This document shows positions 1,635-34,000 of a stretch of 64,000 nt of DNA, in pieces. Where the stretch lies: NCBI GenBank assembly GCA_002269645.1, contig NIVC01000180.1, positions 62,001 through 126,000 of the forward strand, given 5' to 3'. Under the pieces are notes generated by a model, which was given only the letters and a program-made list of their open reading frames with translations, was not told where the DNA came from and did no database searches. Both the position numbers and the translations under genes were made by a program. The DNA is from Macrostomum lignano (lineage: Eukaryota). Position 1 is the first letter of the stretch. Every line of letters starts with the position of its first letter.

Positions 1635-5412
<3,778 letters not shown>

Positions 5413-5413
5413 G

Positions 5414-13300: not shown

Positions 13301-16213
13301 ATACCAGGGCCCAACCCAGCCGCGTGCCAACTGGCCAACTAATCCTTAGCCTCCCGCCCGCACCGCAGACGCATTCAACATTTTCTCCCTGGACGCCAGG
13401 CAGAACTTCTTCGCCAAGTACTCGCGCCGCGGCAAGGACAGCCCCAGGTCCTACATGCACACGGTGCGCAAGCCGTTCGGTCAGTACAGCTTCGTGGCGC
13501 TTGACGTGGTGCCGATGCCGGGCCCGAAGCGGCCGTATAACTTTTTTGGATTCTTGGACACGGTGAGACCCCAGTTGCGGTTGGGGATAATTCTCCCTTT
13601 GCTTACCAAATTTGAGTCGAAATTCTAGGTAAGGTAAAAGTACAGCCCGGGGCACATGTGTACACGTAAATTTGTATGTATAATTTTGTTCTGCATATTT
13701 ATCAGCAAGTACTTGTACTGCAAGTCTCAAGCATTCAACACTGTCGAGATGTTCAACGATTCCTTCGGAACGGTCGGATTTTCCGAGTTGTCGAAATTGT
13801 AGGAGGGCTGCGGCCACTGTGGCGCACAGCCTTCGGCGACATCGAAAACCAGCGTCATTGCAATTCTGCTCATTCCGCAGACGCCTAAGTGTAGTAGGGC
13901 ATAGTTTAGGAATGCAAATAGTATTTGCTTTTACGCTACTGATAGTAGTTTTCAGTTGCGGAAGAATTGGTAATTAGGGTGGTTGGGGTTTTACAGGATT
14001 CTTTATAAATAAAGAGCAGTTGGGCTGCAGTCATCCTGTTTTAAGAAAATCTAGCCAAAAAGCATTAAGGTAAAGGGATAATAATTGACCAGCATAGACA
14101 AACATTGACAAGCATATCTGGGAGTCTTGCCCAAAACACAATAAAAAGGAAAAATACTAGGACAGTTTAATGTAAAAACCTTTTGTACACAGTTTAAAAC
14201 CTATCTCCGATGTCCTGTCTTACTTCTTTAATATCTAAGCCCCAGAAATTAGGGACTAACAGGCACCTGGGGGCAGCAAACTACCAAAGTCAAACAAGTT
14301 AAAATGATTGTCTCACCACTGCCGCAGACCGCCATCCTGGATGTGCAGCGCCTCGCTCGCAAAGCTCGGACGAGCAACCACTCGTTCTGGTTCGGCCACT
14401 ACCCGCTGTCGATCATTGTTAGCCAGGGCTTCGATTTGCACAGCTTTCTTGGGTGAGTACTTTTAGAGCTCAACGTATTGATTTTGATTGATGCTGAATT
14501 GGCCTGCTATGCGTGGTTTCTATGGTTGCTATGCGGAGTTTTACGAGCTCGTGTGGCCCGCAGCCGGCACGCCTATTCGTACATGTGCGGCCACCTGCAC
14601 ACCCTGGGCGGCTCCGTGCCCAACATGTACGGCCTGCACCCCGAGGGCTTCCTGGAGCTCGAGCTGGGCGACTGGATGGACAACCGGCTGTACCGCATTG
14701 TTGCCATTGACAACGACGTTGTCAGCTTCCGCGACCTCCGCCTGGGCACCTGGCCCGCTGTGCACGTGACCAGCCCGAAGGACGCCAGGTACCTGCTGCC
14801 GCACAAGGAGCCGGCGGCCTGGCTGAACCGCAGCCTGGAGATCCGCGTGTTGGCCTTCTCGCCCGACGCGATCGCCTTCGTCAAGGTGTGGCTCGACGGC
14901 GGTTACCTTGGCAACGCGACGCCTCAGCCAGGCGTGGGCGTGGCCGGGCTCTACTCGTTGCCATGGAAACCTGGGGCGCATGCCGGCGACCGGCACCGGC
15001 TAGAGGTTCGAGTCCGAGACGCCATCGGCCGTGAGGCCTACGTGGAGCAGGAGTTCTCCATGACAGGTGGGTCACGGAGAGGCAGGTGTGTCACTGAGAG
15101 GTCAGATGGGTCACTGAGAGGTCAGATGGGTCACTAAGAGGTCGGGTGGGTCACTGAGAGGTCAGGTGGGTCACTGAGAGGTCAGGTGGGTCACTGAGAG
15201 GTCAGGTGGGTCACTGAGAGGTCAGGTGGGTTACTGAGAGGTCAGGTGGGTCACTGAGAGGTCAGGTGGGTCACTGAGAGGTCAGGTGGGTCACTGAGAG
15301 GTCAGGTGGGTCACTAAGAGGTCAGGTGGGTCACTAAGAGGTCAGGTGGGTCACTGAGAGGTCAGGTGTGAGGTCAAGTGGGTCACTGAGAGGTCAGGTG
15401 GGTCACTAAGAGGTCAGGTGGGTCACTGAGAGGTCAGGTGGGTCACTGAGAGGTCAGGTGTGAGGTCAAGTGGGTCACTGAGAGGTCAGGTGGGTCACTA
15501 AGAGGTCAGGTGGGTCACTGAGAGTTCAGGTGGGTCACTGAGAGGTCAGGTGGGTCACTGAGAGGTCAGGTGGGTCACTGAGAGGTCAGGTGGGTCACTG
15601 AGAGTTCAGGTGGGTCACTGAGAGTTCAGGTGGGTCACTGAGAGGTCAGGTGGGTCACTGAGAGGTCAGGTGGGTCACTGAGAGGTCAGGTAAGCACCGG
15701 CAGTCTGTCAAGATCCCTCGCCTCCCCTCCCGCCTGAGACAGGCCAGCCGAATTGGCGATTCGGCCGCCTGCAGAACCTCATCCTGCTGGGCGACGTGAC
15801 CAAATTCGTTCGGCTGGTCTTCTACACCACCTGGCTGGCCCTGTTCGCGCCGCTGATCGGCATTCGCGTGGCCAGATATCGATTTGCGGGTAAGTAATTT
15901 GCGCCTGGCCTACCTGTCTGCTGTGAGCAAGATACCTTGATAAGGACAGTAAACCAGACATATTCTCAAACATTAAAACAGATGTGCATCAGATGTTCGT
16001 AGATGGCAGTCAGATTGAAGAAAAAAAGACATACAGACAGACAGACAGGGACAGACAGACAGACAGGGACAGACAGACAGACAGACAGGGACAGACAGAC
16101 AGGGACAGACAGACAGACAGACAGGGACAGACAGACAGACAGAAAGACAGACAGGGACAGACAGACAGACAGACAGACACTGATAGACAGACAGACAGAC
16201 AGACACTGATAGC

Positions 16214-16278
<65 letters not shown>

Positions 16279-16280
16279 CT

Positions 16281-16320
<40 letters not shown>

Positions 16321-16328
16321 CTGATAGC

Positions 16329-16365
<37 letters not shown>

Positions 16366-16373
16366 CTGATAGC

Positions 16374-16418
<45 letters not shown>

Positions 16419-16565
16419 CTGATAGCAGACAGACAGACACTGATAGCAGACAGACAGACAGACAGACAGACAGAAAGACAGACAGACAGACAGACAGACA
16501 CTGATAGACAGACAGTCAGACAGACAGACAGACAGACAGAGACAGAGAGGCAGACAGACAGGCAT

Positions 16566-16620
<55 letters not shown>

Positions 16621-16665
16621 CTGATAGCAGACAGACAGACAGACAGACAGACAGACACTGATAGC

Positions 16666-16706
<41 letters not shown>

Positions 16707-16714
16707 CTGATAGC

Positions 16715-16755
<41 letters not shown>

Positions 16756-16782
16756 CTGATAGCAGACAGACGGACAGACACT

Positions 16783-16842
<60 letters not shown>

Positions 16843-16844
16843 CT

Positions 16845-16896
<52 letters not shown>

Positions 16897-16937
16897 CTGA
16901 TAGCAGACAGACAGACAGACAGACAGACACTGATAGC

Positions 16938-16974
<37 letters not shown>

Positions 16975-17001
16975 CTGATAGCAGACAGACAGACAGACAC
17001 T

Positions 17002-17041
<40 letters not shown>

Positions 17042-17043
17042 CT

Positions 17044-17095
<52 letters not shown>

Positions 17096-17184
17096 TTGAT
17101 AGCAGACAGACAGACAGACACTGATAGCAGACAGACAGACAGACAGACAGACAGACACTGATAGCAGACAGACAGACAGACACT

Positions 17185-17220
<36 letters not shown>

Positions 17221-17233
17221 GTCAGACAGAGAG

Positions 17234-17266
<33 letters not shown>

Positions 17267-17268
17267 CT

Positions 17269-17312
<44 letters not shown>

Positions 17313-17320
17313 CTGATAGC

Positions 17321-17357
<37 letters not shown>

Positions 17358-17365
17358 CTGATAGC

Positions 17366-17398
<33 letters not shown>

Positions 17399-17499
17399 CT
17401 GATAGCAGACAGACAGACAGACAGACAGACAGACACTGATAGCAGACAGACAGACAGACAGACAGACAGACACTGATAGCAGACAGACAGACAGACACT

Positions 17500-17539
<40 letters not shown>

Positions 17540-17541
17540 CT

Positions 17542-17621
<80 letters not shown>

Positions 17622-17629
17622 CTGATAGC

Positions 17630-17666
<37 letters not shown>

Positions 17667-17767
17667 CTGATAGCAGACAGACAGACAGACAGACAGACAG
17701 ACACTGATAGCAGACAGACATACAGACAGACAGACAGACACTGATAGCAGACAGACAGACAGACACT

Positions 17768-17835
<68 letters not shown>

Positions 17836-17843
17836 CTGATAGC

Positions 17844-17880
<37 letters not shown>

Positions 17881-17888
17881 CTGATAGC

Positions 17889-17925
<37 letters not shown>

Positions 17926-17952
17926 CTGATAGCAGACAGACAGACAGACACT

Positions 17953-17996
<44 letters not shown>

Positions 17997-17998
17997 CT

Positions 17999-18050
<52 letters not shown>

Positions 18051-18083
18051 CTGATAGCAGACAGACAGACAGACACTGATAGC

Positions 18084-18120
<37 letters not shown>

Positions 18121-18147
18121 CTGATAGCAGACAGACAGACAGACACT

Positions 18148-18195
<48 letters not shown>

Positions 18196-18197
18196 CT

Positions 18198-18233
<36 letters not shown>

Positions 18234-18270
18234 CTGATAGCAGACAGACAGACAGACAGACACTGATAGC

Positions 18271-18303
<33 letters not shown>

Positions 18304-18330
18304 CTGATAGCAGACAGACAGACAGACACT

Positions 18331-18374
<44 letters not shown>

Positions 18375-18376
18375 CT

Positions 18377-18420
<44 letters not shown>

Positions 18421-18428
18421 CTGATAGC

Positions 18429-18469
<41 letters not shown>

Positions 18470-18508
18470 CTGATAGCAGACAGACAGACAGACAGACAGA
18501 CAGACACT

Positions 18509-18544
<36 letters not shown>

Positions 18545-19424
18545 CTGATAGCAGACAGACAGACAGACAGACAGCTGACTAGCTGGCATTTTCTAGTACA
18601 GATAGAAAATCTTTTCCGAAAACAGTATTTAAATGTCCCGTGACCAGCCGAACCCCGCGTGTTCGCCTCTCCAGACTCGCTGGTGCAGTCAATGTGCAGC
18701 TGGTTTCATCCGGAAATCACCCGAGGCCTGTACAGATTTGTGCTCAGCGACGGCCTGTTCTATCCGTGGATTGTCTATTTTCTCTACATGGGATGCGGTG
18801 AGTCTGCGGTGCCGGGGCACAGCGGATTAAAGAATCGGATAGCAATGCCTGAGACTTCATCCAGTAGAAATGCTGTCTTTAGGGCATTGCCTACTACTAA
18901 TAGTATGAGTGGAATGTCCAGTCCACACTGGTTCCCAGACCGGGAGTCTGGCTTGCCTTCATTTGCGCCCCGTTGCCAACCCGCCAGGCCCGCTGATGAT
19001 GGGCTACTTCGTGGACGACAGCTTCGGCGTGATGTTCCTCAGCGGGCTCTACATTGGCGGCACCTGGCTGCCGGAGAGCCTGATCTACGTCAGCGAGTTC
19101 ATCCAGATGTGCGCCTTTCACCTGCCGCTGCTGGCCCTGCTCTGCTACCGGCTTGGCAGGCAGGTTGACAGGACGCCCGCTGCCATGGCAACCCGTTGGC
19201 AGCGGTTGGCGTCCATCCTTCTTGATAGTCGCTCTTGGATTTACCCGCTGCTGGCCTGGCAGCTGTGGCTGTCCGTCAACTTCTTGCTGGCCACCTACGA
19301 CCTGACGGTGTTCCTGCTGAGCCCCTGCCGCCTGTGGCAGGTCGGCTTTGGCTGGTACCTGCACAGGACCGTCTGCCGCAACGAGGCTTCCATGCTGGCC
19401 CATCATAGCGGCTCGCAGCACTGA
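7386..19424 (+). CDS. TMEM62: Transmembrane protein 62 (calcineurin-like metallophosphoesterase plus C-terminal TM region), about 656 aa, 8 exons
   Basis: Exons 7386-7577, 12502-12751, 13369-13562, 14328-14452, 14564-15066, 15743-15889, 18675-18797, 18988-19424. All junctions GT-AG with consistent phases; total 1971 nt. Motifs [53 protein letters not shown] match TMEM62. Confidence 0.93.
9650..10130. repeat. 17-bp minisatellite (CCCAGATTAGCACTCAG) in TMEM62 intron 1
   Basis: Near-perfect copies at about 9870-10085 with degenerate flanking copies. Confidence 0.9.
11330..11480 (+). mobile_element. Possible non-autonomous Helitron-like 3' end fragment
   Basis: AAGTTTGAAAAAAATCGGTTCAGG...CAGACAGATCTTAGAGATTTAGTATAT followed by a (GAT)n tract. 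The AGAGATTTAGTATAT tail recurs twice at about 37025-37090. Confidence 0.3.
12800..13135 (+). repeat. Degenerate telomere-like (TTAGGG/TTTAGG)n tract in TMEM62 intron 2
   Basis: Runs such as TTAGGGTTAGGGTTTAGGTTTAGGTTAGGG read directly. Confidence 0.85.
15067..15689 (+). repeat. 20-bp minisatellite GTGGGTCACTGAGAGGTCAG (about 31 copies) starting at the TMEM62 exon 5 donor
   Basis: Array begins at CAG|GTGGGT (15067) and ends immediately before GTAAGC (15690). Confidence 0.95.
16031..18573. repeat. (GACA)n satellite with recurrent CTGATAG / CTGATAGCA interruptions, TMEM62 intron 6
   Basis: Read directly; about 2.5 kb. Confidence 0.98.
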
Positions 19425-20906: not shown

Positions 20907-23315
20907 TCATTCCTTGGCTGCCTCCTCCGCACTGACCGAAGCCGCCTTCGCCTTCTGATGCTCGTCCTCGGCTTGCTCCTCGTCAGAGGGTGCCGCAGCG
21001 GCGTACAGATTCTTCAGGCACAGCAGCAGCTGGTGCATGAGCTCCCTGCCGGAGCCATCCAACCAGCTCAGCTGCATCTCGATGACGCCGCTGTCGTTAT
21101 AATCCAGCGCCAGATTCGCCACCAGCACCGGCGGCTCTTTCGGCTGAGTCGCCTGCTTGGACGGGCTGGATGAGGCCGTCAGCTTGCGCGGGCTGCGCTG
21201 ACGACGCGGCTGCGGGGGTCCTCGGCCGGCATTGGCGGCGGCGGCTTCCAGCCGGGGACGCTTCTCTGCAGGCGGCGAGCAGCCCTCTGTGTCTTTCTCG
21301 CTAAATTTGCTGTCACTTTCGCTCTTGATGACATCGTGACCTTTAACGTTGTCTTGACCTTTATTGTCACTATGACCTTCAGCGACGTTATGATCTTTTG
21401 AGTCACTTTGACCGTCAGCAGCGTCATCACCTTTATTGTCTTTTTGACCTTTAGCGACGTCGCAATCTTTAACACCCTGACCTCCGATGACGTCATCGGA
21501 AAGTCGGCTAACTCCCTGGCCCCTGATGCTGTCGCTTTCACTCAGCTCACTTTCCTGGCTTCGATTAGCGGCGTCGCCCTTGTCGGCGCCTGCTGCCGGA
21601 TGCCGGCGCCGATGCCGCTGGCGGGTCCAGGTGACCTCCTTGGCCGACAGGCGCAACCGGCGGCCCGTGGCGCCCTGCTTGTTCAGCTGGTCCCAGCAGT
21701 CGATGCGCAGTCGCCGCTTGAGAACCCGCTTGCACCAGGCGAACACGGAGTCCAGGCTGTAGTCCGGGCTGGGCTGGCCGGCCTCGCCAGCTGGCCGCTG
21801 CGGCAGCTGCATCGTCAGCGGCGGCCGGGACTGCAGCTTGCGCCGCTTGAACTCCGACATTGGAAAACTGACGCCAGACTGGAAAGTCCAGCCAATGCCC
21901 CAGCGCATGACGCGGCCCTGGCAGAACTCGTAGGTGCCGTAGCTGGCAACGCCGAGCCGCTCCAGCAGGCGCTTCAGCGGCTTCAGGGACGGCTTGCGGC
22001 CCAGCATGGAGGTGAAGACGCGGCAGCGGTCGCGGTGTCGGCTTGACTCCTGCGCGATGCGGCTCACGAACATCACCTCGCCGCCTGAGGAGAAACTCTC
22101 GACGCTGGCTGCCGTGCTGGCAGACATTGGAGGGTGCCGGCTGTCCGATCTGCAGAGGGGGGGATGTGCTCTCTGCTGGTGTTGAGCTATGAGAATCCAT
22201 CACTTGATTTGAGCAGGCTCTGAGCACCCCTCACCTGGTGTTAAGCAGGCCCTGAGCACCCCTCACCTGGTGTTAAGCAGGCCCTGAGCACCCCTCACCT
22301 GGTGTTAAGCAGGCCCTGAGCACCCCTCACCTGGTGTTAAGCAGGCCCTGAGCACCCCTCACCTGGTGTTAAGCAGGCCCTGAGCACCCCTCACCTGGTG
22401 TTAAGCAGGCCATGAGCACCCCTCACCTGGTGTTAAGCAGGCCCTGAGCACCCCTCACCTGGTGTTAAGCAGGCCCTGAGCACCCCTCACCTGGTGTTAA
22501 GCAGGCCCTGAGCACCCCTCACCTGGTGTTAAGCAGGCCCTGAGCACCCCTCACCTGGTGTTAAGCAGGCCCTGAGCACCCCTCACCTGGTGTTAAGCAG
22601 GCCCTGAGCCTCGGCCGCATCCGCAAAGAACGGTGGGTTGCACATGCAGAAGTCGAACTGCTCCTGCGGCTCCGCCAGACTCAATGGAAACTCGAGCGGC
22701 CCGGCGTCCGCCGGCGCCAACGCCACCCTGACGCGATCCTGCAGGCCGTTGCGGGCGACATTCTCCTCAGCATAGGCTGCGTTTCTCTTGTCCACTTCAG
22801 TGGCTACAAACCGCCAGCTGGGGTGGCAGCGGACCGCCAGAAGCGGGTAGATGCAGCAGCTGCCAGTGCCGATGTCGATGCCGCGAAGAGTGCTGCTGGA
22901 GGCTGCGTGTGTGAACAGGGAGACGCATTTTACTCGGGATTTCCGCTTCTCTTGACAACTAAAGCCTTCAATTTTTCATTTTGAGACTCATCTTAAACAA
23001 ACCTCGACTCACCCTCGGGAGCGGAGCAATCAACGCCCAGGATGTCCTCCAGCCAGTGCAGGTAGTTCAGCCGCAGCGGCAGCGTCGGGATCAGGCGGTC
23101 CAGCGGCAGCTCCACGCGCAGCTGGAAGTCGCGCTCTAGCAGGGCTCGGGTGAGAGCGGCCAGCTGGTGGGCAGCTTGAAGTTGACCACAACTCGGCCGC
23201 GATCGTCCAGCTGGCAGGCGGCCGCAAAGCTGGGGTTGTCGCGGGCCAGCTGGGCAAAGTCCGGCTTCTCCCGGCGGTAGCGATTGCGAGGGTGCATGAA
23301 GCGGTTCATGGACAT
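20907..23315 (-). CDS. METTL16: RNA N6-adenosine methyltransferase METTL16 (about 620 aa if the 1-nt frameshift is corrected), 3 exons
   Basis: Exons 23315-23013, 22902-22587, 22149-20907. Motifs MHPRNRY, LIPTLPLRLNYLHW, GIDIGTG, FCMCNPPFF, GGEVMFV, EFCQGRVMRWGIGWTF, and a VCR2-like ELMHQL. Exon 1 is one base short at GGG 23169-23171. AATAAA on the minus strand at 20811-20816. Confidence 0.9.
22213..22609 (-). repeat. 32-bp tandem repeat of the METTL16 exon 2/intron 2 junction (12 donor copies)
   Basis: Minus-strand unit GCTCAGGGCCTGCTTAACACCAG|GTGAGGGGT = 23 nt of exon end + 9 nt of intron start. Plus-strand CTCAC recurs at 32-bp spacing from 22230 to 22582. Confidence 0.95.
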
Positions 23316-23348
23316 GGCTGCGGGCTGGGCGGCTTGAGACTCTGGAGC

Positions 23349-24349
23349 TGGGTCTTATCCAGCCTGATTCTGGGTCTTTATCCCACCTAATTCTGTGTCT
23401 TTATCCAGCCTGATTCTGGGTCTTTATCCAACCTAATTCTGGGTCTTTATCCAACCTAATTCTGGGTCTTTATCCAGCCTGATTCTGGGTCTTTATCCAG
23501 CCTGATTCTGGGTCTTTATCCAGCCTGATTCTGGGTCTTTACCCAGCATGATTCTGGGTCTTTATCCAGCCTGATTCTGGGTCTTTATCCAACCTAATTC
23601 TGGGTCTTTATCCAGCCTGATTCTGGGTCTTTATCCAGCATGATTCTGGGTCTTTATCCAGCCTGATTCTGGGTCTTTATCCAGCCTGATTCTGGGTCTT
23701 TATCCAGCATGATTCTGGGTCTTTATCCAGCCTGATTCTGGGTCTTTATCCAACCTAATTCTGGGTCTTTATCCAATCTAATTCTGGGTCTTTATCCAGC
23801 CTGATTCTGGGTCTTTATCCAGCCTGATTCTGGGTCTTTATCCCAGCCTGATTCTGGGTCTTTATCCCAGCCTGATTTTGGGTCTTTATCCCAGCCTGAT
23901 TTTGGGTCTTTATCCCAGCCTGATTCTGGGTATTTATCCAGCCTGATTCTGGGTCTTTATCCAGCATGATTCTGGGTCTTTACCCAGCCTGATTCTGGGT
24001 CTTTACCCAGCCTGATTCTGGGTCTTTATCCAGCATGATTCTGGGTCTTTATCCAGCCTGATTCTGGGTCTTTATCCAGCATGATTCTGGGTCTTTATCC
24101 AGCCTGATTCTGGGTCTTTATCCAGCATGATTCTGGGTCTTTATCCAGCCTGATTCTGGGTCTTTATCCAACCTAATTCTGGGTCTTTATCCAATCTAAT
24201 TCTGGGTCTTTATCCAGCCTGATTCTGGGTCTTTATCCAGCCTGATTCTGGGTCTTTATCCCAGCCTGATTCTGGGTCTTTATCCCAGCCTGATTTTGGG
24301 TCTTTATCCCAGCCTGATTTTGGGTCTTTATCCCAGCCTGATTCTGGGT
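23349..24349. repeat. 23-bp minisatellite (ATCCAGCCTGATTCTGGGTCTTT), left arm
   Basis: About 43 copies; variant units recur with a period of about 418 bp. Confidence 0.95.
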
Positions 24350-27300
24350 CACAGTGTATTTCTTTGGTAAGATTTTTTGAAAAAAATGGCCACTCAAGAT
24401 TTTTACTATCATTAATAGATCACATTTTTCTAGAGAGGAAGCCACAATATTAAAAAAATCTGTCGAGCGGTTGCTGAGTAACTACTGTTTTTCTGTTTTT
24501 CATGCTGTTTCATGCTGTTTTCATTTTTTTGCTTTGATACAGGTTATAATAGGCAAATTGGTATCAAAAACGTTATTCAATGTTTTTCTTTCAACATTAA
24601 TAAATTATATTATTAGTATAAATTTAAAGAATGCTTGTACAATATAAAAACTTTCAGCTTGAAACGTAGTTGTACAATGTCAATATAAATTACACATTAG
24701 GAGTGAAAACAATGTCAAAGTCCACACTGACTACATGTCCTACACATGTCGGCTATTATAATGACGCACAGCCTGAAGCAAACGACTTCCAAAGCTGGGA
24801 TTTTCTACATCCTTGACCTTGAAGTTCGCCCATAGCTGCTGAAAGTCGTGGTGCACTGCTTCAGATGCCTGTTCACTCCAGGGACCAAGTCCTCGCTGTT
24901 GCATCAAACAGAACTGTGGCACATGATGCAGCACTGTGTGAACTTTCGGTGTCACTGAGATCCCGAGGTCCATGAACGTCACTTGAAAATCAGCGATCGT
25001 CTGCTGGAAATTGGAGGCCAGTTCATTGCCAAAGCAGCTGGACACAACAAGCCTGAAGCAGCGCAGTGCAGCAACGTACGGCAAGCACTGTAGCGGGCAC
25101 ATCGATGCCAGAGCATCAACATTCTGCAGGAGCACTTTGCAGCTGTTGCCGGTAAAACTGCCTCCGTGAATTGCCTCCCTGGCGACGTGGCAGTGATGCA
25201 GCCATCTGTCACACTCTGGCCACACTGACTGCATACTACAGTAAATGGTATTTACTACTCCAGTTAGCAGGTGCAGTTCGGGCGGTGGTACAATTTCTAG
25301 GACCATTGTTGAGGCTGGGAAATTTTCTAGAAGACAGGGACGTACCACATTTCCAAAATTCTTGGCAGCTGCAAGCTTGGAGCCAGAAGCCTGGAAGTTT
25401 GCATGGCTGTCTTCGAGAAGCTTCAGTGTGCGATCTGTGCCCTTCTGCAATAGCTTATTCTTGTGGGCATCGCACCAGCAGCAGGGATGAGCAGCACTGT
25501 GAGCCATAAGCCCAAGCAGCATGTTGCACAGCTTTAAGTCGCTAGCGATGGTAAATTTGCCTTGAAGACTGCTCAGTCCAGCTGCCCTCCACAGCAACTC
25601 CAGGTTCTGGTAATTTTCTTGAATGGCTGGTGCGATGGCTACAATAAGAATTCGTTTAACACCGGAGTGCTTTAGCCGACTGCTGCGAGAGTTGCTGCTA
25701 CAGGCTGCCTGTGAAGGCTCAGTGGAGTCAACACACCAACTGGAATCAAACACAGACAGGCAGATCTTGAAGAACCCACCACCTCCATCAATGCCAACCT
25801 TAATCATACAGGTCGATGGGTTCAGTTGTCTTTCTTGAATAATTCGCTTGAGAAGCTGCTGAATGCGCACACAAATAACAGCTGGACGTGATGTTACTTC
25901 TGTCACAACTCCTCGCTCCATGTTGACGAAGTCCAACTGTTGTAGTTCAAAAAAGCTGTCGAGCTGGTGGTGAATGTCAGACAGCTTTTGTTGGAGGTAC
26001 GACTCTACAGCTGTTTTTGAACCCGACGCTGCTCTAATATGGTGAGCCAGCTTCAGCATAGAGCGCGTGCTGAGGCCCATATCCTGCTGAATGCTCACCA
26101 TGCTGCTGACGCTCAGCTGCTGTGGTTGCTTCGGCGTACTCTGAGATGGTGGCTCCACTTCCATGTAAAAGCCTTCTGCATTATGTGCCCTTGTAGCAGG
26201 AGTACAGACATGTGACTTGCCTCGATTTAGCTGCGAGAGGCACTTCACACAGAGCTTCATGCTGACTGGGCGTCGAGTTTTTGACACAGTGCTGGCAGTG
26301 GGCTCGCAAACAATCCTACTTTGACTGTCAGCGCTTGGCCTTCCTCGTGGTCGCCGATTAACTGCTGCTGGATGTCCAAAGTTTGCGGAGCTTTCTCTGG
26401 CAGCCTGACACACAATACAGTTGCATCGAGTAGCTGCTCGGCTTCGTGTTCGAGGAGGCTGGGCTCCAATCTTAGAGTGGTCGAAGTCGGGCAGCGAGGA
26501 CGAAAAGTTTCCTTTCTCGTACTCTAGCAGCGTTATCCTGCATTTTGTGCACAGAGCACTTGGTAGCCGATTGTCCTGCGTATCGTAGCCATGCATCTTG
26601 AACTCTGAGATGAGTGACTGCATGTGCTCATTTATCCGGCGCATTTCCTTGCCCTTATGCATGCAGATGAGGCAGACGATGAGACGAGCATCTTCGTGCG
26701 TTCTGGCACTGCTGCTTTTACTCATAATGCCTAACACTGAGCGTGCTTGGTGTCGATTAAGAAAGGTGCTACACAACAAATCTGATATGTAATGAGACGC
26801 AGAGATTGTGCAATGAATATAAAAACTTCTCTAGTTAGATTAAAGTGAAATCAATCGATAAGAGCGACTTATATATATTCATTGATTGCTGAGCAGACAA
26901 GTTTTTAGCTCAGCAAACTTGTGTGCATTGCGCAATGTATAGCACACTATTTGATTGAGTAATAGATGAGTGACTGCGTTCTTCAACTCCAAATCATGCA
27001 CACACAGTCTCCCCTCAATAGAGAAGTAGTACAGCTAGTACAAAACCTATTTGTTACATTCAATCACACAATTGTACCCTGTATTTTTGGAACATTCATT
27101 TTGATTAGCATATGAAATGTGTGTAAAAAACAGCCTATTTGTTGGCTAAACAAATGGACCTTAAGCTTATAAGTGATTTTCTGTTTGAACTAGAAAAACA
27201 AAAACAAATAGCACGAAACAGCATAAAACAGCATTAAAAACAGAAAAACAGTAGTTTCTTAGCAACTGCTTGATGGATTTTTTAAAGTCTTGTAGCATTC

Positions 27301-27387
27301 TCTCTGGACATACATGATCTATTGATGATAGTAAAAATCTGGGGTGGCCATTTTTTTCAAAAAATGTCACCATAGAAATACACTGTG
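24350..27387 (-). mobile_element. Full-length Chapaev/RAG1-Transib-like DNA transposon (3038 bp)
   Basis: Termini CACAGTG (24350-24356) and CACTGTG (27381-27387). Imperfect TIRs of about 180 bp. 4-bp TSD GGGT (24346-24349 / 27388-27391). One uninterrupted transposase ORF. Confidence 0.9.
24740..26725 (-). CDS. Chapaev/RAG1-like DDE transposase (661 aa from the ATG at 26725)
   Basis: N-terminal Cys/His clusters: H..CLIC, CTKC, CNCIVC, CVKC..HVC. Core motifs KVGIDGGG (D), SDLKLCNMLLGL (D), HPCCWC, PPELHLLTG, TPKVHTVLHH, LGPWSEQASEAVH (E) parallel the RAG1 D600/D708/CxxC/HxxxxH/E962 arrangement. Confidence 0.85.
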   Translation of the reverse strand: MSKSSSARTHEDARLIVCLICMHKGKEMRRINEHMQSLISEFKMHGYDTQDNRLPSALCTKCRITLLEYEKGNFSSSLPDFDHSKIGAQPPRTRSRAATRCNCIVCQAARESSANFGHPAAVNRRPRGRPSADSQSRIVCEPTASTVSKTRRPVSMKLCVKCLSQLNRGKSHVCTPATRAHNAEGFYMEVEPPSQSTPKQPQQLSVSSMVSIQQDMGLSTRSMLKLAHHIRAASGSKTAVESYLQQKLSDIHHQLDSFFELQQLDFVNMERGVVTEVTSRPAVICVRIQQLLKRIIQERQLNPSTCMIKVGIDGGGGFFKICLSVFDSSWCVDSTEPSQAACSSNSRSSRLKHSGVKRILIVAIAPAIQENYQNLELLWRAAGLSSLQGKFTIASDLKLCNMLLGLMAHSAAHPCCWCDAHKNKLLQKGTDRTLKLLEDSHANFQASGSKLAAAKNFGNVVRPCLLENFPASTMVLEIVPPPELHLLTGVVNTIYCSMQSVWPECDRWLHHCHVAREAIHGGSFTGNSCKVLLQNVDALASMCPLQCLPYVAALRCFRLVVSSCFGNELASNFQQTIADFQVTFMDLGISVTPKVHTVLHHVPQFCLMQQRGLGPWSEQASEAVHHDFQQLWANFKVKDVENPSFGSRLLQAVRHYNSRHV

Positions 27388-27699
27388 GGGTATTTATCCA
27401 GCCTGATTCTGGGTCTTTATCCAGCATGATTCTGGGTCTTTACCCAGCCTGATTCTGGGTCTTTACCCAGCCTGATTCTGGGTCTTTATCCAGCATGATT
27501 CTGGGTCTTTATCCAGCCTGATTCTGGGTCTTTATCCAGCATGATTCTGGGTCTTTATCCAGCCTGATTCTGGGTCTTTATCCCAGCCTGATTCTGGGTC
27601 TTTATCCAGCCTGATTCTGGGTCTTTATCCAGCCTGATTCTGGGTCTTTATCCAGCCTGATTCTGGGTCTTTATCCCAGCCTGATTTTGGGTCTTTATC
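27388..27699. repeat. 23-bp minisatellite, right arm (continuation after the transposon)
   Basis: Resumes with GGGTATTTATCCAGCC, identical to the uninterrupted copy at 23928. Confidence 0.95.
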
Positions 27700-28048: not shown

Positions 28049-31000
28049 TCAAGCGGAGCCACCAAGTCGAGCGGCCTGCAGCTTGGCCGCCCTCGCCAGC
28101 AGGCCCGGAAATCGATCGCGCATCGACTGGTAAGCCGGCGCCGCTTCCGGCCTGGGTTCGAACGTCCTGGACTCGACTCCGGCGCCGCTGTCGGGCGGCA
28201 GAGAGGCGAGAAAATCGGCGCTTGGGCCGGCGAGAGCGCTGGCGCCAAGTAGAGCGGCGCCGAGGGCAGCCGAGTTGCCCAGGCCGGGCTGGACAATCAC
28301 CGGAGTAGCCAGGGCGTCAGCCAGCACCTGCGGAGCGGCTGGAGCTGTTGCAGCTGCCGACTCAACTACTCATTCAGTCGCAGCATCTACTTTGAATTCA
28401 TCTTCCGAATATACTACCTATTTAGCTACCAGATCAACTACCGATTTATCTACCAGATCAACTACCTATTTAGCTACCAGATCAACTACCGATTTATCTA
28501 CCAGATCAACTACCTATCTAGCTACCAGATCAACTACCGATCTAGCTACCACATCAACTACCGATTTATCTAACAGATCAACTACCGATCTAGCTACCAC
28601 ATCAACTACCGATTTATCTACCAGATCAACTACCTATCTAGCTACCAGATCAACTACCGATTTATCTACCAGATCAACTACCGATCTAGCTACCAGATCA
28701 ACTACCGATTTATCTACCAGATCAACTACCGATCTAGCTACCAGATCAACTACCGATTTATCTACCAGATCAACTACCGATCTAGCTACCAGATCAACTA
28801 CCGATTTATCTACCAGATCAACTACCGATCTAGCTACCAGATCAACTACCGATTTATCTACCAGATCAACTACCGATCTAGCTACCTCTATTTAACTACT
28901 GATACATCAGCAGCAACAGTGTATATTAACTAAATCAGCTTAGCTACTAAGCGCCGTCCCAAAGCCTGACCAACAGCAGCTCACCTGAGCCACCCGCGGA
29001 TTGGCCGAGGCTCCCCCAGTGGCCAGCACCCTGGCGCCGGGCTCCCCGGGCCGGAAGCCGAGGCTCTCAGCGAACAGCCGCAGCGACATGGCGTGGCTCT
29101 CCAGACAGGCTCGAGCCTCGGCGGCCGGACCTTCGACAAAGTTAGCGCCGTCTGGCAGCGGCTCTCCGTCGGCGCCGAACCGATAGCGACCCAGCGCGCC
29201 CTCCGGCACAATCTCCGGCGAGTCGAAGTACAGCCCGACGAGCCCGCCATTGCCGGGAGGCCGCGAGTCCAGCAGCCGGTCAAACTCGGCCCAGGAGCCG
29301 CCCGCGAACCGGTCCCTGATGGCCTCGCGGGTCAGCGCGCCGTTCTTAAGGCTGGTTGGGTTGGGGATTCGGCACTGAGCAAGGTCCTGGGCTCGAGCTC
29401 CAGTCAGCTGCTCACTAAGCCAGAGGACTCACACTGCAGCCAGCTGCTCAGCTAGCGGACTCACACTGCAGCCAGCTGCTCAGCTAGCGGACTCACACTG
29501 CAGCCAGCTGCTCAGCTAGCGGACTCACACAACAATAGGCATGCAGGACTCGGTGTCCACAGCGCAGGCCATGACCACGCAGCCCAGGCTTGGCAGGGCG
29601 GCCCCGGCGGGCAGGCAGCGGCCGGGTGACCTCAGCAGGGCGCAGCTGGAGCTGCCCAGAGTGACGGCGAGGCAGCCCGGCTGCAGCCGCAGTCCAGCCA
29701 GCGTGGCCGGGTTGTCGCCGGTGAAGGCGGCCACGCGGCAGTCGAGCGAGAATCCCCACCGAGCAGAGAGGTAGGCCGACACCCGGCCGAGGATCGTGCG
29801 GCCAGGGACGATCGGGCCGAGGAGGCTCTGGGGCGGGGAGATGAGGGACTGAGGCTGGAGCCAGCTTAGGTACAGGTGGGGCCGGAGTCACTTGGAGTCA
29901 GACAGGCTCAGGAGTAGAATGTGGGGTCACTAGGGAGTAGACTGTGGGTCACTAGGGAGTAGAATGTGGGTCACTAGGGAGTAGACTGTGGGTCACTAGG
30001 GAGTAGACTGTGGGTCACTAGGGAGTAGACTATGGGGTCACTAGGGAGTAGACTGTGGGGTCACTAGGGAGTAGACTGTGGGTCACTAGGGAGTAGAATG
30101 TGGGTCACTAGGGAGTAGACTGTGGGTCACTAGGGAGTAGACTGTGGGTCACTAGGGAGTAGACTATGGGGTCACTAGGGAGTAGACTGTGGGGTCACTA
30201 GGGAGTAGACTGTGGGTCACTAGGGAGTAGACTGTGAGATCACTAGGGAGTAGAATGTGAGGTCACTAGGGAGTAGACTGTGGGTCACTAGGGAGTAGAC
30301 TGTGAGATCACTAGGGAGTAGAATGTGAGGTCACTAGGGAGTAGAATGTGGGTCACTAGGGAGTAGACTGTGAGGTCACTAGGGAGTAGACTGTGGGTCA
30401 CTAGGGAGTAGAATGTGGGTCACTAGGGAGTAGACTGTGAGGTCACTAGGGAGTAGAATGTGGGTCACTAGGGAGTAGACTGTGAGGTCACTAGGGAGTA
30501 GACTGTGGGTCACTAGGGAGTAGACTGTGGGGTCACTAGGGAGTAGACTGTGGGTCACTAGGGAGTAGACTGCAGAGTATATTACGATTTAGTAGAGTAA
30601 ATTTTCAAGTGGCGATAGATGAAAAGCGGGACTCAAAGCTTAACGGTCCGCACCTCCAGTCCGGGCTGCACGAAATCGCACAGGCGGGGCACCCAGGCTC
30701 TCTCGGCCAGCGACATCAGATTCATGCCGGACCCGTCGGCCTCGTCGATGCTGGCGTAGTCGCCGAGGAATAGCGAGGCAGCAAAACTGCTGACCAGGGA
30801 GACTCGCTCGGTGTCGGCCAGAGTGCCGGCGAGGCGCTGCTTCATCAACTGGGCAGCCGTGTAGCGGTGGAAGGCGCGGGCGCCGGTCAGGGCGGCCAGG
30901 GCCTGCGGGGTAAGGCGGGGCGGTCGGTGGCGAGTAGGGAGGAATCTGCTGGCGGCCCAGGCTGAGGGTCTGGGAGGCTGTCTCTGAGGGTTTGGGAGGC

Positions 31001-34000
31001 TGGCTGAGGGTTTGGGAGGCTGGCTGAGGGTCTGGGAGGCTGGTTGAGGGTCTGGGAGGCTGTCTCTGAGGGTCTGGGAGGCTGGCTGGGGTCTGAGAGG
31101 CTGGCTGAGGGTTTGGGAAGCTGGCTGAGGGTTTGGGAGGCTGGCTGAGTGTCTGGGAGGCTGGCTGAGGGTTTTGGAGGCTGGCTGAGGGTCTGGAAGG
31201 TTGTCTGAGGGTCTGGGAGGCTGGTTGGGGGTCTGGGAGGTTGTCTGAGGGTTTGGGAGGCTGGTTGAGGGTCTGGGAGGCTGACTGAGGGTTTGGGAGG
31301 CTGGTTGAGGGTCTGGGAGGCTGGCTGAGGGTTTTGGAGGCTGGCTGAGGGTCTGGGAGGCTGGTTGGGGGTCTGGGAGGTTGTCTGAGGGTTTGGGAGG
31401 CTGGTTGAGGGTCTGGGAGGCTGACTGAGGGTTTGGGAGGCTGGTTGAGGGTCTGGGAGGTTGTCTGAGGGTCTGAGAGGCTGTCTGAAGGTTTGGGAGG
31501 CTGGCTGAGTGTCTGGGAGGCTGGCTGAGGGTTTTGGAGGCTGGCTGAGGGTCTGAGAGGCTGGCTGGGGTCTGAGAGGCTGGCTGAGGGTTTTGGAGGC
31601 TGGCTGAGGGTCTGGAAGGTTGTCTGAGGGTTTGGGAGGCTGGTTGAGGGTCTGGGAGGTTGTCTGAAGGTCTGGGAGGCTGGCTGAGGGTCTGGGAGGT
31701 TGTCTGAGGGTCTGGGAGGCTGTCTGAAGGTTTGGGAGGCTGTCTGAGGGTCTGGGAGGTTGGCTGGGGTCTGAGAGGCCGGCTGAGGGTTTGGGAGGCT
31801 GGCTGAGGGTTTGGGAGGCCGTCTGAGGGTCTGGGAGGCTGGCTGAAGGTTTGGGAGGCTGTCTGAGGGTCTGGGAGGCTGGCTGAAGGTTTGGAAGGCT
31901 GGCAGCCCAGACTGAGGGTCTGGGAGGCTGGCTGAAGGTTTGGAAGGCTGGCAGCCCAGACTGAGGGTCTGGGAGGCTGGCGGCCCAGCAGCTAAGGATT
32001 CAATACCGCAGGTTCGCAGCAACCAAGAGTTCAATCAAAACGAACCTCCGGGCCGCCAGCGAAGGCCTCGAGCTGGGCGCACTGCTCGCCGGTGCTGGAG
32101 TCCATCCACACTGGCGAGTCGGTGGTGCTGAAGCAGGCGGCCAGCTGCTCGGCCATGGGCAGCTCCGGCTTCAGCTGGCGAAGCGTGTCGCGCGCTCCGG
32201 TGCGCCAGTAGACGCTGCCGTGCTGCTGCCCGGAGCCGCAGATGACGGCGGCCTGGCTGAATTCAACGCCGCGGGCCTTCAGCTGGGCGAGCAGGCGGTC
32301 CAGCGCCTCCACCCACATCAGCGTCGGGGAGGTGATGGTGGCACCATCTGGGTGGACGCGCACGCCGCCTTTGGTTCTGCGAGCAGTTTTTTGAGACGAT
32401 TCTGACTGCTTTTAGAAGAACAGTCTAGCAACCACACAGCAACCAGGTGCGAATCCTACTCACTTGTAATGCGGAAGAGCTTCATCGAATTTTAGGAATT
32501 CTTCAAAAAAGATTTCCCCAGTAGTCAGGCCAACTCCAATGGCTTTTACCTGTTAGTTTTTGAAATATGCTTTGAAGACATTTCTGATTGGGAAGATTCA
32601 AATACTTAAAGCTATGTCATATTATTTTTGACACAATGGCATTAGCATTTTAAACTAAAATCTAATAAGTATCTAGTCAAGTTATAACTGGAGCATACTA
32701 ATTAGGTTTTTAATTTGTCCCACTTGTATTTTGTTCCTATATTGTTTTATACACCAAAAACATTGGCATAAATTAGCATTCCAAAATGTGTCAACTTTGA
32801 AGGAAGACATTTCTAACATATATGCAACCTTCTGGCACCTAGATTGCTACTGGTCTTGTTAATTTATATTTATTATTAAAATATATTAAATGATCTTCAG
32901 TGTATGATCATTATCGTACAATACAATATGCCTAAAAGAGCTCAGACATACTCAGACTTATTCTTATTATTGTTGGTCTATTTAAAGCTTTAGAACCTAT
33001 TAAGCAAAAACCTATGATATTCTAAGTTCAACTGAATGGTATGATTTGCCATTGACAATATGCCAATGCCAATAATAGCTAGCTAACTAATACTGTAGCT
33101 TAGTTGTTAATACCTAAGACCAGAGCAAGATATACCAGCTCAATGTTAGACTCATTGACTATGATAGCAAGTCAACCTATCTAATAGAAAATCCTTAATT
33201 ATCTCCTATTTATCTTTAGATTACTATAACTTACTTATTGATTATTATCTTTGATAGGCCTATTTTAGGCCTATAGACCTAATTTCTGCTTTTTGCTAAG
33301 AAATTCTACTAATAATTTCTGCTTATTGCTTCCCTTTCCTTCTATAAAGACCAAATCATACTTTGCTTTATTTAATTACTGAGTATAATAAAAAAATAAT
33401 AGGCCTAGGTTGGGGTCCTAGATAGCTAAAAAGTCAAAGGAAATAACTTGTTTAGGAAAGGGCTTCATTTATGTATATTTATATTGATTCACCTACATGT
33501 ATTTTTATCATAGGGCCTATTACAATTAATTTATATATATATATATAAATTTTAGCCACAGCCCTAATTTTTTATATGTTTAGCAATACCTACCAACATA
33601 CATGCGCAACTGCTGGCCGAGCTGGCCGATCCGGCCACCATAAATCGTGGCTGACCAGGGGTAAGTCGCAAAATTGAGTTGACCAAAAACAGAAAAACAC
33701 AAGAACCAAGAAAGAAAGGCAACAGGAAAGCGAAAAAAGAGTGGTTCAAGGAAAAATGGTGAAGCAAAAGAAAAACAAGTCGCATAAGAAGCAAACTAAG
33801 TCGCAAAAAGGATCAGGTAAGTCGCAACAGGAGCAACTAAGTCGCAAAAAGGATCAGGTAAGTCGCAATAGGAGCAACTAAGTTGCAAAAAGGATCAGGT
33901 AAGTCGCAATAGGAGCAACTAAGTCGCAAAAAGGATCAGGTAAGTTGCAACAGGAGCAACTAAGTCGCAAAAAGGATCAGGTAAGTCGCAATAGGAGCAA

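What the first reader, a model, noticed from the sequence alone, without database searches (positions are those of the whole stretch)
24350..27387. Intact RAG1-like/Chapaev transposon with 23-RSS-like ends (CACAGTG-N23-AAAAAAATG at both termini)
Seen: both ends start with the exact V(D)J heptamer CACAGTG, followed after exactly 23 nt by AAAAAAATG (6/9 match to nonamer ACAAAAACC). TSD is 4 bp and TIRs are about 180 bp. The single uninterrupted 661-aa ORF keeps all putative D/D/E and CxxC/HxxxxH residues plus a Cys-rich N-terminus resembling the Chapaev/RAG1 N-terminal zinc region. No RING and no RAG2-like ORF are visible. Known: Transib and ProtoRAG make 5-bp TSDs and have RSS-like TIRs, Chapaev makes 4-bp TSDs, and RAG1 shares its core with Transib and N-terminal motifs with Chapaev. 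Inference: a recently inserted, possibly active element combining Chapaev features with symmetric 23/23 RSS geometry. It could inform RAG origins and serve as a transposition tool. The nonamer similarity could be chance in A-rich TIRs.
Basis: partly seen in the sequence, partly recalled or inferred. Interest (0 to 1): 0.85.

Follow-up and report, generated by a model that had tools for sequence, protein, structure and literature searches.

The report
Intact Chapaev transposon with RSS-like ends
This is a complete 3-kb cut-and-paste DNA transposon of the known Chapaev group, a distant cousin of the RAG1 immune recombinase, and its ends share a two-part "CACAG, about 22 bases, A-rich block" layout with its relatives, much like Transib ends and V(D)J signal sequences.

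Summary
Window 24350-27387 is a 3,038-bp element. It has about 185-bp imperfect terminal inverted repeats (TIRs), exact CACAGTG termini, AAAAAAATG exactly 23 nt inside both ends, and a perfect 4-bp target-site duplication (GGGT) within a 23-bp satellite. It carries one intact 661-aa ORF.

The protein is a Chapaev-superfamily (CMC) transposase:
- It is homologous to the Chapaev3 transposase Garfield_BM (hhalign 98.4%).
- Its N-terminus is a CHAPA zinc domain like Repbase Chapaev-1/2/5_HM and Chapaev-1_AA (99%).
- It has the D, D, C(2)C, LH, H(4)H and E motifs.
- The only significant structural matches of its AlphaFold model in the PDB are RAG1, amphioxus RAG1-like and Transib.
- It has no RING finger and no RAG2-like gene.

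The end geometry is not chance. Of 12 independent relatives with readable ends (30-48% protein identity), 11 have CACRG, a 21-23 nt spacer (27 in one), then A5-8 mostly followed by T(T/G)G(C/T)CC. Six of the eight elements with both ends readable have perfect 4-bp duplications.

So this is a new member of a known and very large family (about 11,000 protein clusters). Recent activity could not be tested. The one modestly new point is that the Transib/RSS-23-like bipartite end is conserved in a Chapaev clade.

The parts
24346..24349 (.). Left copy of the 4-bp target-site duplication (GGGT)
   Evidence: It is identical to 27388-27391. A 5-bp duplication does not fit.
24350..24535 (+). Left TIR. 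It lies at the 3' side of the transposase gene.
   Evidence: 172-186 bp, about 85% identical to the right arm.
24350..24356 (+). Terminal heptamer CACAGTG, the predicted cleavage site
   Evidence: CACRG is invariant in 10 aligned ends of relatives.
24380..24393 (+). Second conserved block AAAAAAATGGCCAC, 23 nt after the heptamer. It is the predicted transposase-binding site.
   Evidence: The same block occurs at about positions 29-44 in 11 of 12 related elements. It is identical in both arms, while the spacer has 3 mismatches.
24740..26725 (-). Transposase ORF, 661 aa, single exon, intact (stop codon at 24740-24742)
   Evidence: It keeps 101 of the 104 columns that are at least 80% conserved among 46 relatives.
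26228..26698 (-). CHAPA-type N-terminal zinc domain, aa 10-166: H10, C18xxC21, C59xxC62, C101xCxxC106, C159xxC162, H172xC174
   Evidence: hhalign 99.0%, E 4e-18, against Chapaev-1/2/5_HM and Chapaev-1_AA CHAPA sequences. 85% against the RAG1/RAG1L/RING-Chapaev CHAPA profile.
26336..26344 (-). Conserved GRP (AT-hook-like) motif, aa 128-130, in a disordered linker
   Evidence: GRP is nearly invariant in the family. The region has low pLDDT. A role in binding the A-tract is an inference.
24743..25951 (-). RAG1/Transib-like catalytic core, aa 259-661: D313, D396, C415xxC418, E483-L-H485, H596x4H601, E618 (E622 as an alternative)
   Evidence: for the motifs. for the fold: RAG1 E 5e-12, BbRAGL 3.6e-7, HzTransib 4.5e-7, nothing else below 0.1. 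for homology to Chapaev3 Garfield_BM.
27201..27387 (-). Right TIR. It lies at the 5' side of the gene.
27344..27357 (-). Second conserved block AAAAAAATGGCCAC of the right end
27381..27387 (-). Terminal heptamer CACAGTG of the right end
27388..27391 (.). Right copy of the 4-bp target-site duplication (GGGT)
23348..24349 (.). Host 23-bp satellite array, left part. This is the insertion target and serves as a paralogous empty site.
   Evidence: period 23, 43 copies, 94% matches.
27388..27699 (.). Host 23-bp satellite array, right part, in phase with the left part once the element and one TSD copy are removed

Best explanation
An autonomous cut-and-paste DNA transposon of the Chapaev superfamily (CMC / 'CMCT' clade), from the subgroup without a RING finger.

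Its single gene encodes a DDE transposase with two parts. The catalytic core has the RAG1/Transib architecture: an RNase-H fold carrying D313, D396 and E618, with an inserted C(2)C...H(4)H zinc module. The N-terminus is a CHAPA multi-zinc-finger domain followed by a GRP AT-hook-like linker.

Proposed mechanism:
1. A transposase dimer pairs the two ends. Each end is bipartite. The terminal CACAGTG is the cleavage site read by the catalytic core. The A7-TGGCCAC block, about two helical turns inside, is the anchoring site, probably for the N-terminal DNA-binding region.
2. Both ends have the same 23-nt spacing, so pairing is symmetric (23/23) and there is no 12/23 rule.
3. The element is excised, probably by a nick followed by a hairpin on the flanking DNA, as in RAG and Transib.
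4. It is inserted with a 4-bp stagger, which gives the 4-bp duplication.

Shown here: element anatomy, family membership, fold, conservation of both end blocks, and the 4-bp duplication.
Inferred: which domain binds the second block, the hairpin chemistry, and present-day activity.
For: - Anatomy.
- Chapaev membership: BLASTP E 2e-11 and hhalign 98.4% (E 4e-15, 354 columns) to Chapaev3 Garfield_BM, whose sequence came from the PMC4079192 supplement.
- N-terminus: aa 10-166 matches the CHAPA domains of Chapaev-1/2/5_HM and Chapaev-1_AA at 99.0%, E 4e-18. Those sequences came from PMC4411706 Additional file 5.
- Hallmarks: the motifs C(2)C, LH and H(4)H, CAC...GTG termini and a 3-4 bp TSD are the published Chapaev hallmarks (PMC4079192). 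All are present.
- Fold: model pLDDT 87.7. All 40 PDB hits with E <= 0.001 are RAG1, BbRAG1L or HzTransib, aligned over about 520-635 columns.
- Ends: CACRG plus an A-rich block recurs at the termini of 11 of 12 independent relatives. There were 13 motif hits against about 0.7 expected in shuffles.
- TSD: perfect 4-bp duplications in 6 of the 8 elements with both ends readable.
- Constraint on the blocks: within this element the heptamer and the second block are identical in the two arms, while the spacer between them has 3 mismatches.
- Integrity: 101 of 104 conserved columns are retained.
Against: - HMM searches find no sequence-level match to RAG1, Transib or any Pfam transposase family, so the RAG1 link rests on predicted structure and motifs.
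- No nonamer-binding-domain-like fold was found when aa 95-305 were modelled and searched alone; the best hit had E = 0.7. The binder of the second block is therefore unknown.
- The spacer varies from 21 to 23 nt, and is 27 in one relative. One relative, from Brassicogethes, has lost the A-run.
- The TIR arms are only about 85% identical.
- No AATAAA or ATTAAA signal lies downstream of the stop codon inside the element.
- Copy number and age are unknown.
- The Chapaev reference sequences were machine-read from PDFs and contain OCR errors.
Confidence: 0.85

Rival explanations
1. The RSS-like geometry is a compositional accident. The TIRs are A/T-rich, so an A-run about 23 nt from a CAC terminus means nothing functionally.
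For: - The TIR is 69% A+T.
- A second AAAAAAATC lies at TIR position 103.
- The spacer is not fixed among relatives, and L003 lacks the A-run.
- The match to the RSS nonamer is only 6/9.
Against: - Shuffle P is 0.013 for the RSS nonamer and 0.0006 for the Transib nonamer.
- The block extends beyond the A-run, as T(T/G)G(C/T)CC, mostly followed by AT.
- It recurs at the same distance in 11 of 12 elements whose transposases are only 30-48% identical to this one.
- It is perfectly conserved between the two arms here, while the spacer is not.
Confidence: 0.1
2. It is a Transib or RAG-like (ProtoRAG/RAGL) element rather than a Chapaev.
For: - The best structural matches are RAG1, BbRAGL and HzTransib.
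- The end CACAGTG-N23-AAAAAAATG matches the published Transib TIR consensus CACAATG-N23-AAAAAAATC at 6/7 and 8/9 positions (PMC1131882).
Against: - The TSD is 4 bp, not 5, here and in 5 relatives.
- There is no RAG2-like ORF and no room for one in 3 kb.
- There is no RING finger.
- No sequence-level hit to RAG1 or Transib chains was found, even with a family profile.
- Chapaev3 and Chapaev CHAPA sequences do match by sequence.
Confidence: 0.04
3. It is an old, immobile relic or a host-retained gene, not a recently inserted active element.
For: - The TIR arms differ by about 15%, whereas some relatives have 97-99% identical arms.
- Only one copy lies in the window.
- No canonical poly(A) signal lies inside the element.
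Against: - The 4-bp TSD is perfect.
- The 1,983-nt ORF is open and keeps 101 of 104 conserved columns.
- If the arm differences were neutral decay after insertion, the ORF should by my estimate have collected several stop codons. The arm asymmetry is therefore more likely inherited from the source copy.
- The arm mismatches avoid the heptamer and the second block.
Confidence: 0.35

Closest known systems
Chapaev superfamily, RING-less subgroup (Repbase Chapaev-1_HM, -2_HM, -5_HM from Hydra; Chapaev-1_AA from Aedes)
   Same: - The N-terminal CHAPA zinc domain has the same Cys/His pattern: HEx.R..VC..C ... LP..IC..C ... RS...C.C..C ... GRP ... K.C. hhalign gives 99%, E 4e-18, 29% identity.
- No RING finger.
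- CAC...GTG termini and a 4-bp TSD.
   Different: - Only about 29% identity over the CHAPA domain.
- The catalytic parts of those Repbase proteins were not available for comparison.
- Their TIR structure could not be checked.
- This is a different family within the group.
Chapaev3 (e.g. Garfield_BM of Bombyx mori)
   Same: The catalytic region is homologous over about 350 residues with the same C(2)C, LH and H(4)H motifs.
   Different: - Chapaev3 makes 3-bp TWA duplications (PMC4079192); this element makes 4 bp.
- hhalign does not align the Chapaev3 N-terminus to this family.
Transib transposons (e.g. HzTransib)
   Same: - Predicted fold.
- D, D, C(2)C, H(4)H, E layout.
- Bipartite TIR: heptamer, about 23 nt, then AAAAAAAT(C/G) (PMC1131882).
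   Different: - Transib makes 5-bp TSDs.
- Per PMC4411706, the canonical Transib transposase has no identifiable domain beyond its core.
- No sequence-level similarity is detectable by HMMER.
RAG1 / V(D)J recombination signal sequences
   Same: - RAG1 is the best structural match (E 5e-12, about 595 columns).
- The spacing from D396 to C415 is 19 residues, and H(4)H precedes E by about 17-21 residues. From memory, mouse RAG1 is similar: D708 to C727, and H937/H942 to E962.
- The heptamer CACAGTG is exact.
- The nonamer positions 5 and 6 that matter most are A, A.
- The first CHAPA zinc module aligns to the RAG1 N-terminal profile at 85%.
   Different: - No RAG2 partner.
- No RING finger.
- No detectable nonamer-binding domain.
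- Symmetric 23/23 ends instead of 12/23.
- The nonamer matches at only 6/9.
- It is a mobile element, not a host recombinase.

Membership tests
Chapaev superfamily (CMC) | 3-4 bp target-site duplication | tested here: met
   GGGT on both sides. Satellite periodicity confirms 4 bp. Five relatives also have perfect 4-bp TSDs.
Chapaev superfamily (CMC) | Invariable 5'-CAC ... GTG-3' termini | tested here: met
   CACAGTG ... CACTGTG.
Chapaev superfamily (CMC) | [quoted passage not shown] | tested here: met
   D313, D396, C415xxC418, L484-H485, H596x4H601, E618. All are invariant or nearly invariant in 47 sequences.
Chapaev superfamily (CMC) | Sequence homology to described Chapaev transposases | tested here: met
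   Garfield_BM: BLASTP 2e-11, hhalign 98.4%. CHAPA domain of Chapaev-1/2/5_HM and -1_AA: 99.0%.
Chapaev superfamily (CMC) | Phylogenetic placement inside Chapaev relative to EnSpm, Mirage and Transib | not testable with these tools
   No Repbase, Dfam or RepeatPeps library was available.
Chapaev3 subgroup | 3-bp TWA target-site duplication between A and T | tested here: not met
   The TSD is 4 bp (GGGT) with no TWA.
Transib | 5-bp target-site duplication | tested here: not met
   A 5-bp match fails in all 8 elements tested.
Transib | TIR of heptamer CACAATG, about 23 nt spacer, then AAAAAAATC | tested here: met
   6/7 and 8/9 identical at the same spacing (consensus from PMC1131882).
Transib | Sequence similarity of the transposase to Transib or the RAG1 core | tested here: not met
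   No hit to HzTransib, RAG1 or BbRAGL chains with a family profile at E <= 10. The similarity is structural only.
RAG-like transposon (ProtoRAG/RAGL) | Adjacent RAG2-like gene | tested here: not met
   The 3,038-bp element has a single ORF. The only other ORFs of at least 80 aa overlap the transposase gene on the opposite strand or run out of the TIR into the flank.
RAG-like transposon (ProtoRAG/RAGL) | RING finger after the CHAPA domain | tested here: not met
   No RING pattern and no Pfam RING hit.
V(D)J RSS | Heptamer CACAGTG plus nonamer ACAAAAACC at 12 or 23 (+/-1) bp, used as a 12/23 pair | tested here: inconclusive
   The heptamer is exact, the spacer is 23, and the nonamer matches at 6/9 with the key A5 and A6 present. 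Both ends are of the 23 type, so there is no 12/23 asymmetry. Cleavage by RAG was not tested.
RAG1 nonamer-binding domain | NBD-like fold upstream of the catalytic core | tested here: not met
   A model of aa 95-305 (pLDDT 78) gave no PDB hit below E = 0.7.

The most novel reading that the evidence does not exclude
The bipartite end (CACRG heptamer, a spacer of about 22 nt or two helical turns, then an A-rich block) may be an ancestral trait of the whole Chapaev-Transib-RAG lineage rather than a Transib/RAG invention. In that case the RSS-23 architecture predates the Chapaev/Transib split. This clade of small, single-gene, intact elements would give a simple experimental system for testing how spacer length is measured without RAG2.
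Probability: 0.3. Interest if true: 0.6.

Novelty: new member of a known kind. Interest (0 to 1): 0.4.

Why it matters
As a transposon it is ordinary. It is one more family in a superfamily described in 2007, and that superfamily turns out to be very large and nearly unannotated in Pfam.

Two points have some value:
- It is an apparently intact, compact, single-ORF element with a confidently modelled RAG1-like transposase, so it is a reasonable candidate for a transposition assay.
- The heptamer, spacer and A-rich block layout is conserved among distant members of this Chapaev clade and closely matches the Transib TIR consensus. I found no paper in the searchable library that describes this for Chapaev. 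If it holds in curated Repbase families, it bears on when the RSS architecture arose.

Tried and rejected
- Pfam scan of the protein and of 47 homologues: no transposase, RAG1 or RAG1_imp_bd hit. The only recurrent family was DUF1280, in 9 of 47.
- PDB sequence searches with the single protein and with the family profile: only tropomyosin-like noise.
- hhalign of the family against the human RAG1 N-terminus alone: nothing, 0.3%. A signal (85%) appears only against a 13-sequence CHAPA profile.
- Separate model and fold search of aa 95-305, looking for a RAG1 nonamer-binding domain: no significant hit.
- Identifying the source organism through a TMEM62-like exon: the best hits were only 37% identical and unnamed. 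The window's own transposase is not in the protein collection; the best hit is 44% identical.
- Many metagenome contigs break inside the TIRs, so only 12 relatives gave readable termini. L062 carries sequencing adapters and was discarded.
- L001's right flank is only 3 nt long, and L003 has a 3/4 TSD match, so neither was counted as a perfect TSD. In L067 the flanks do not match (read).
- Reading the element as a Transib or RAGL was rejected on TSD length, gene content and sequence evidence.
Full report
**What is in the window.** The element occupies 24350-27387, 3,038 bp. The left end begins with CACAGTG and the right end finishes with its reverse complement. The arms form inverted repeats of 172-186 bp at about 85% identity. 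Directly outside both ends lies GGGT. A 5-bp duplication does not fit.

The element sits inside a 23-bp satellite, 43 units to the left and 13.5 to the right. Removing the element and one GGGT restores the repeat phase with a single mismatch. The array therefore acts as a set of paralogous empty sites and fixes the duplication at 4 bp.

Exactly 23 nt after each heptamer comes AAAAAAATG, continuing as GCCAC. Between the arms, the first 14 nt and positions 23-44 are identical. The mismatches in the first 47 nt fall at positions 15, 20, 22, 45 and 47. They lie in the spacer or just after the second block.

The only substantial ORF is 24740-26725 on the minus strand, 661 aa from its ATG. There is no second gene.

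**What the protein is.** Sequence searches against Pfam and all PDB chains gave no transposase, RAG1 or Transib match, either for the protein or for a 47-sequence family profile. The large protein collection returned 84 homologues at no more than 44% identity. Almost all were unnamed and came from short metagenome contigs. Named examples came from the beetle Brassicogethes aeneus and the flatworm Macrostomum lignano. An exhaustive profile search found 10,938 representative clusters at E <= 0.001 and 1,730 at E <= 1e-30. The family is therefore very large.

The alignment shows these invariant or nearly invariant residues:
- D313, in the motif GIDGGGG
- D396
- C415xxC418
- E483-L-H485
- H596x4H601
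- S617-E618-Q619, E622 and H625

This is the D, D, C(2)C, LH, H(4)H, E pattern that the literature gives as diagnostic for Chapaev and CMC transposases (PMC4079192; PMC12730594). E618 is the likelier catalytic glutamate. It is conserved in the Chapaev3 protein Garfield_BM, whereas E622 is Q there.

**Direct tests of Chapaev membership.** I took the Garfield_BM (Chapaev3) protein from the supplement of PMC4079192. BLASTP gave E = 2e-11, and profile comparison gave 98.4% probability, E 4e-15, over 354 columns covering aa 197-637.

I then took the CHAPA-domain alignment from Additional file 5 of PMC4411706 (machine-read, with OCR errors). Residues 10-166 of the family match the CHAPA domains of Chapaev-1_HM, -2_HM, -5_HM and Chapaev-1_AA at 99.0%, E 4e-18. 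According to that paper's alignment, these are the Chapaev sequences without a RING finger, and this protein lacks one too.

Against a 13-sequence profile of RAG1, RAG1-like and RING-bearing Chapaev CHAPA domains, the first zinc module aligns at 85%, E 6.5e-6. Against the human RAG1 N-terminus alone there is nothing. The similarity to the RAG1 N-terminus is therefore real but weak, and it is mediated through the Chapaev family.

**Structure.** An AlphaFold2 model built on the 47-sequence alignment has mean pLDDT 87.7. Foldseek against the PDB gave 40 hits at E <= 0.001, all of them RAG1, amphioxus BbRAG1L or HzTransib:
- RAG1: best E 5e-12, about 595 aligned columns
- BbRAG1L: E 3.6e-7
- HzTransib: E 4.5e-7
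- Next best hit of any other kind: E = 0.16

The catalytic core therefore has the RAG1/Transib architecture, as expected for the CMC-Transib clade.

I tested whether the region upstream of the core resembles the RAG1 nonamer-binding domain by modelling aa 95-305 separately (pLDDT 78). No significant match was found.

**Are the ends more than chance?** The published Transib TIR consensus is CACAATG, a 23-bp spacer, then AAAAAAATC (PMC1131882). This element has CACAGTG, 23 nt, then AAAAAAATG. Shuffles that preserve the TIR composition give P = 0.0006 for such a match to the Transib nonamer and P = 0.013 for at least 6/9 to the RSS nonamer.

The stronger evidence is comparative. I fetched DNA for relatives and located their ends. 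Twelve independent elements have at least one readable terminus. Their transposases are 30-48% identical to this one. All twelve start with CACRG (one decayed arm reads CATGG).

Eleven have an A5-8 run starting at positions 29-32, or 35 in one. In ten of them it is followed by T(T/G)G(C/T)CC or TTCTCC; L001 reads AAAAAATAT instead. That corresponds to a spacer of 21-23 nt, with one case of 27 (L061 and L067). The Brassicogethes element lacks the A-run but keeps TGCACAT at the same place.

The composite pattern gave 13 hits at element ends, against about 0.7 per shuffle of all loci. Two elements, L044 and L061, carry an extra inner copy of the block. Of the eight elements with both ends readable, six have perfect 4-bp duplications: GGGT, GTAT, ACGA, TTAT, GACT and CACC.

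The bipartite end and the 4-bp duplication are therefore traits of the clade. The spacer is about two helical turns but is not strictly 23.

**How it most likely works.**

Shown here: an intact transposase gene of the Chapaev type between two bipartite ends, flanked by a 4-bp duplication.

Inferred from the family and from RAG/Transib biochemistry:
- A transposase dimer synapses two like ends (23/23, with no 12/23 asymmetry).
- The catalytic core cuts at the CAC boundary, probably by a nick followed by a hairpin on the flank.
- The excised element is joined to a new target with a 4-bp stagger.

The second block is most simply a transposase anchoring site. It is needed at both ends, it is conserved across divergent elements, and within this element it is conserved where the spacer is not. 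My candidate reader is the N-terminal region: the CHAPA zinc fingers plus the nearly invariant GRP AT-hook-like motif at aa 128-130, which lies in a disordered linker. An AT-hook would suit an A7 tract. This step is a hypothesis and was not tested.

**Age and activity.** The ORF is open and keeps 101 of 104 columns that are at least 80% conserved among relatives. The TSD is perfect. The 15% difference between the arms is unlikely to be decay since insertion. By my estimate, that much neutral change would have put several stop codons into a 2-kb ORF. The asymmetry was probably inherited from the source copy.

Against activity, there is only one copy in the window. No AATAAA or ATTAAA lies downstream of the stop codon within the element. 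I could not identify the source genome. Activity therefore remains open.

**Comparison and novelty.** The element meets every Chapaev criterion I could test. It fails the Chapaev3 criterion (TWA 3-bp TSD), the Transib criterion (5-bp TSD) and the RAGL criteria (RAG2L gene, RING finger). It is a new family-level member of a known superfamily.

What is overstated is the claim that the combination is special to this element, the claim of 'exactly 23', and the assumption of recency.

Within the searchable literature I found no description of an RSS/Transib-like bipartite TIR in Chapaev.

Noticed in passing
Homologues P0007 aa 209-345 and P0075 aa 238-364; 9 of 47 family members: Pfam DUF1280 (PF06918), a family with no assigned function, matches the region just before and including the first catalytic Asp of these transposases. 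The match is above the gathering score: 29.6 bits against a cut-off of 25. From memory, the family is built on Caenorhabditis proteins. DUF1280 is probably derived from Chapaev transposases.
   Followed up: partly
window 23348-24350 and 27388-27699: A 23-bp satellite (CTGGGTCTTTATCCAGCCTGATT, about 57 units, 94-95% matches) hosts the insertion. It also provides the empty-site control.
   Followed up: yes
window 22212-22609, 28413-28886, 29418-29530, 29911-30572, 30960-31988: Five further unrelated tandem arrays (periods 32, 24, 32, 22 and 20 bp; 84-99% matches) are packed around the element. This is a satellite-rich region of about 10 kb with 57-60% GC.
   Followed up: no
window ~1524-5504: A pure (ATCT)n microsatellite runs for several kilobases (GC 0.25, GC skew -1.0). 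The long 'ORFs' listed there are artefacts of the repeat.
   Followed up: partly
window ~16000-18600: A long (ACAG)n-type microsatellite is interrupted regularly by CACTGATAG (AT skew 0.82). It again produces spurious long ORFs on both strands.
   Followed up: partly
window 61655-63922 (-): An ORF with a retroviral-type integrase zinc-binding domain and core domain (Integrase_H2C2 and rve). It is probably part of an LTR retrotransposon that runs to the window edge.
   Followed up: no
window 14478-15137 (+) and 20907-22127 (-): Probable host exons: a TMEM62 Ig-like domain (E 6e-8) and the C-terminal part of an RNA methyltransferase of the Methyltransf_10 family (E 9e-17). The nearest database relatives of the TMEM62 piece are only 37% identical, so the source organism is poorly represented in public protein sets.
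   Followed up: partly
L044 ~4450 (-) and L061 ~483 (+): Two related elements carry an additional inner copy of the A-rich/TTGCCC-like block at about 6-12 nt from the heptamer, besides the one at 21-27 nt. This recalls the 12- and 23-type ends reported for some Transib families.
   Followed up: no
L062 40-58 and 3360-3378: A public metagenome contig encoding homologue P0012 has Nextera adapter sequence (AGATGTGTATAAGAGACAG) next to its inverted repeats. Its ends are assembly artefacts.
   Followed up: no
L001 and L003 left flanks: Two relatives of the CACGGTGTGCC end type both have GGTC immediately outside the left terminus. The right flanks do not match (3/4 in L003; only 3 nt available in L001). 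This could be a target preference or a coincidence.
   Followed up: no
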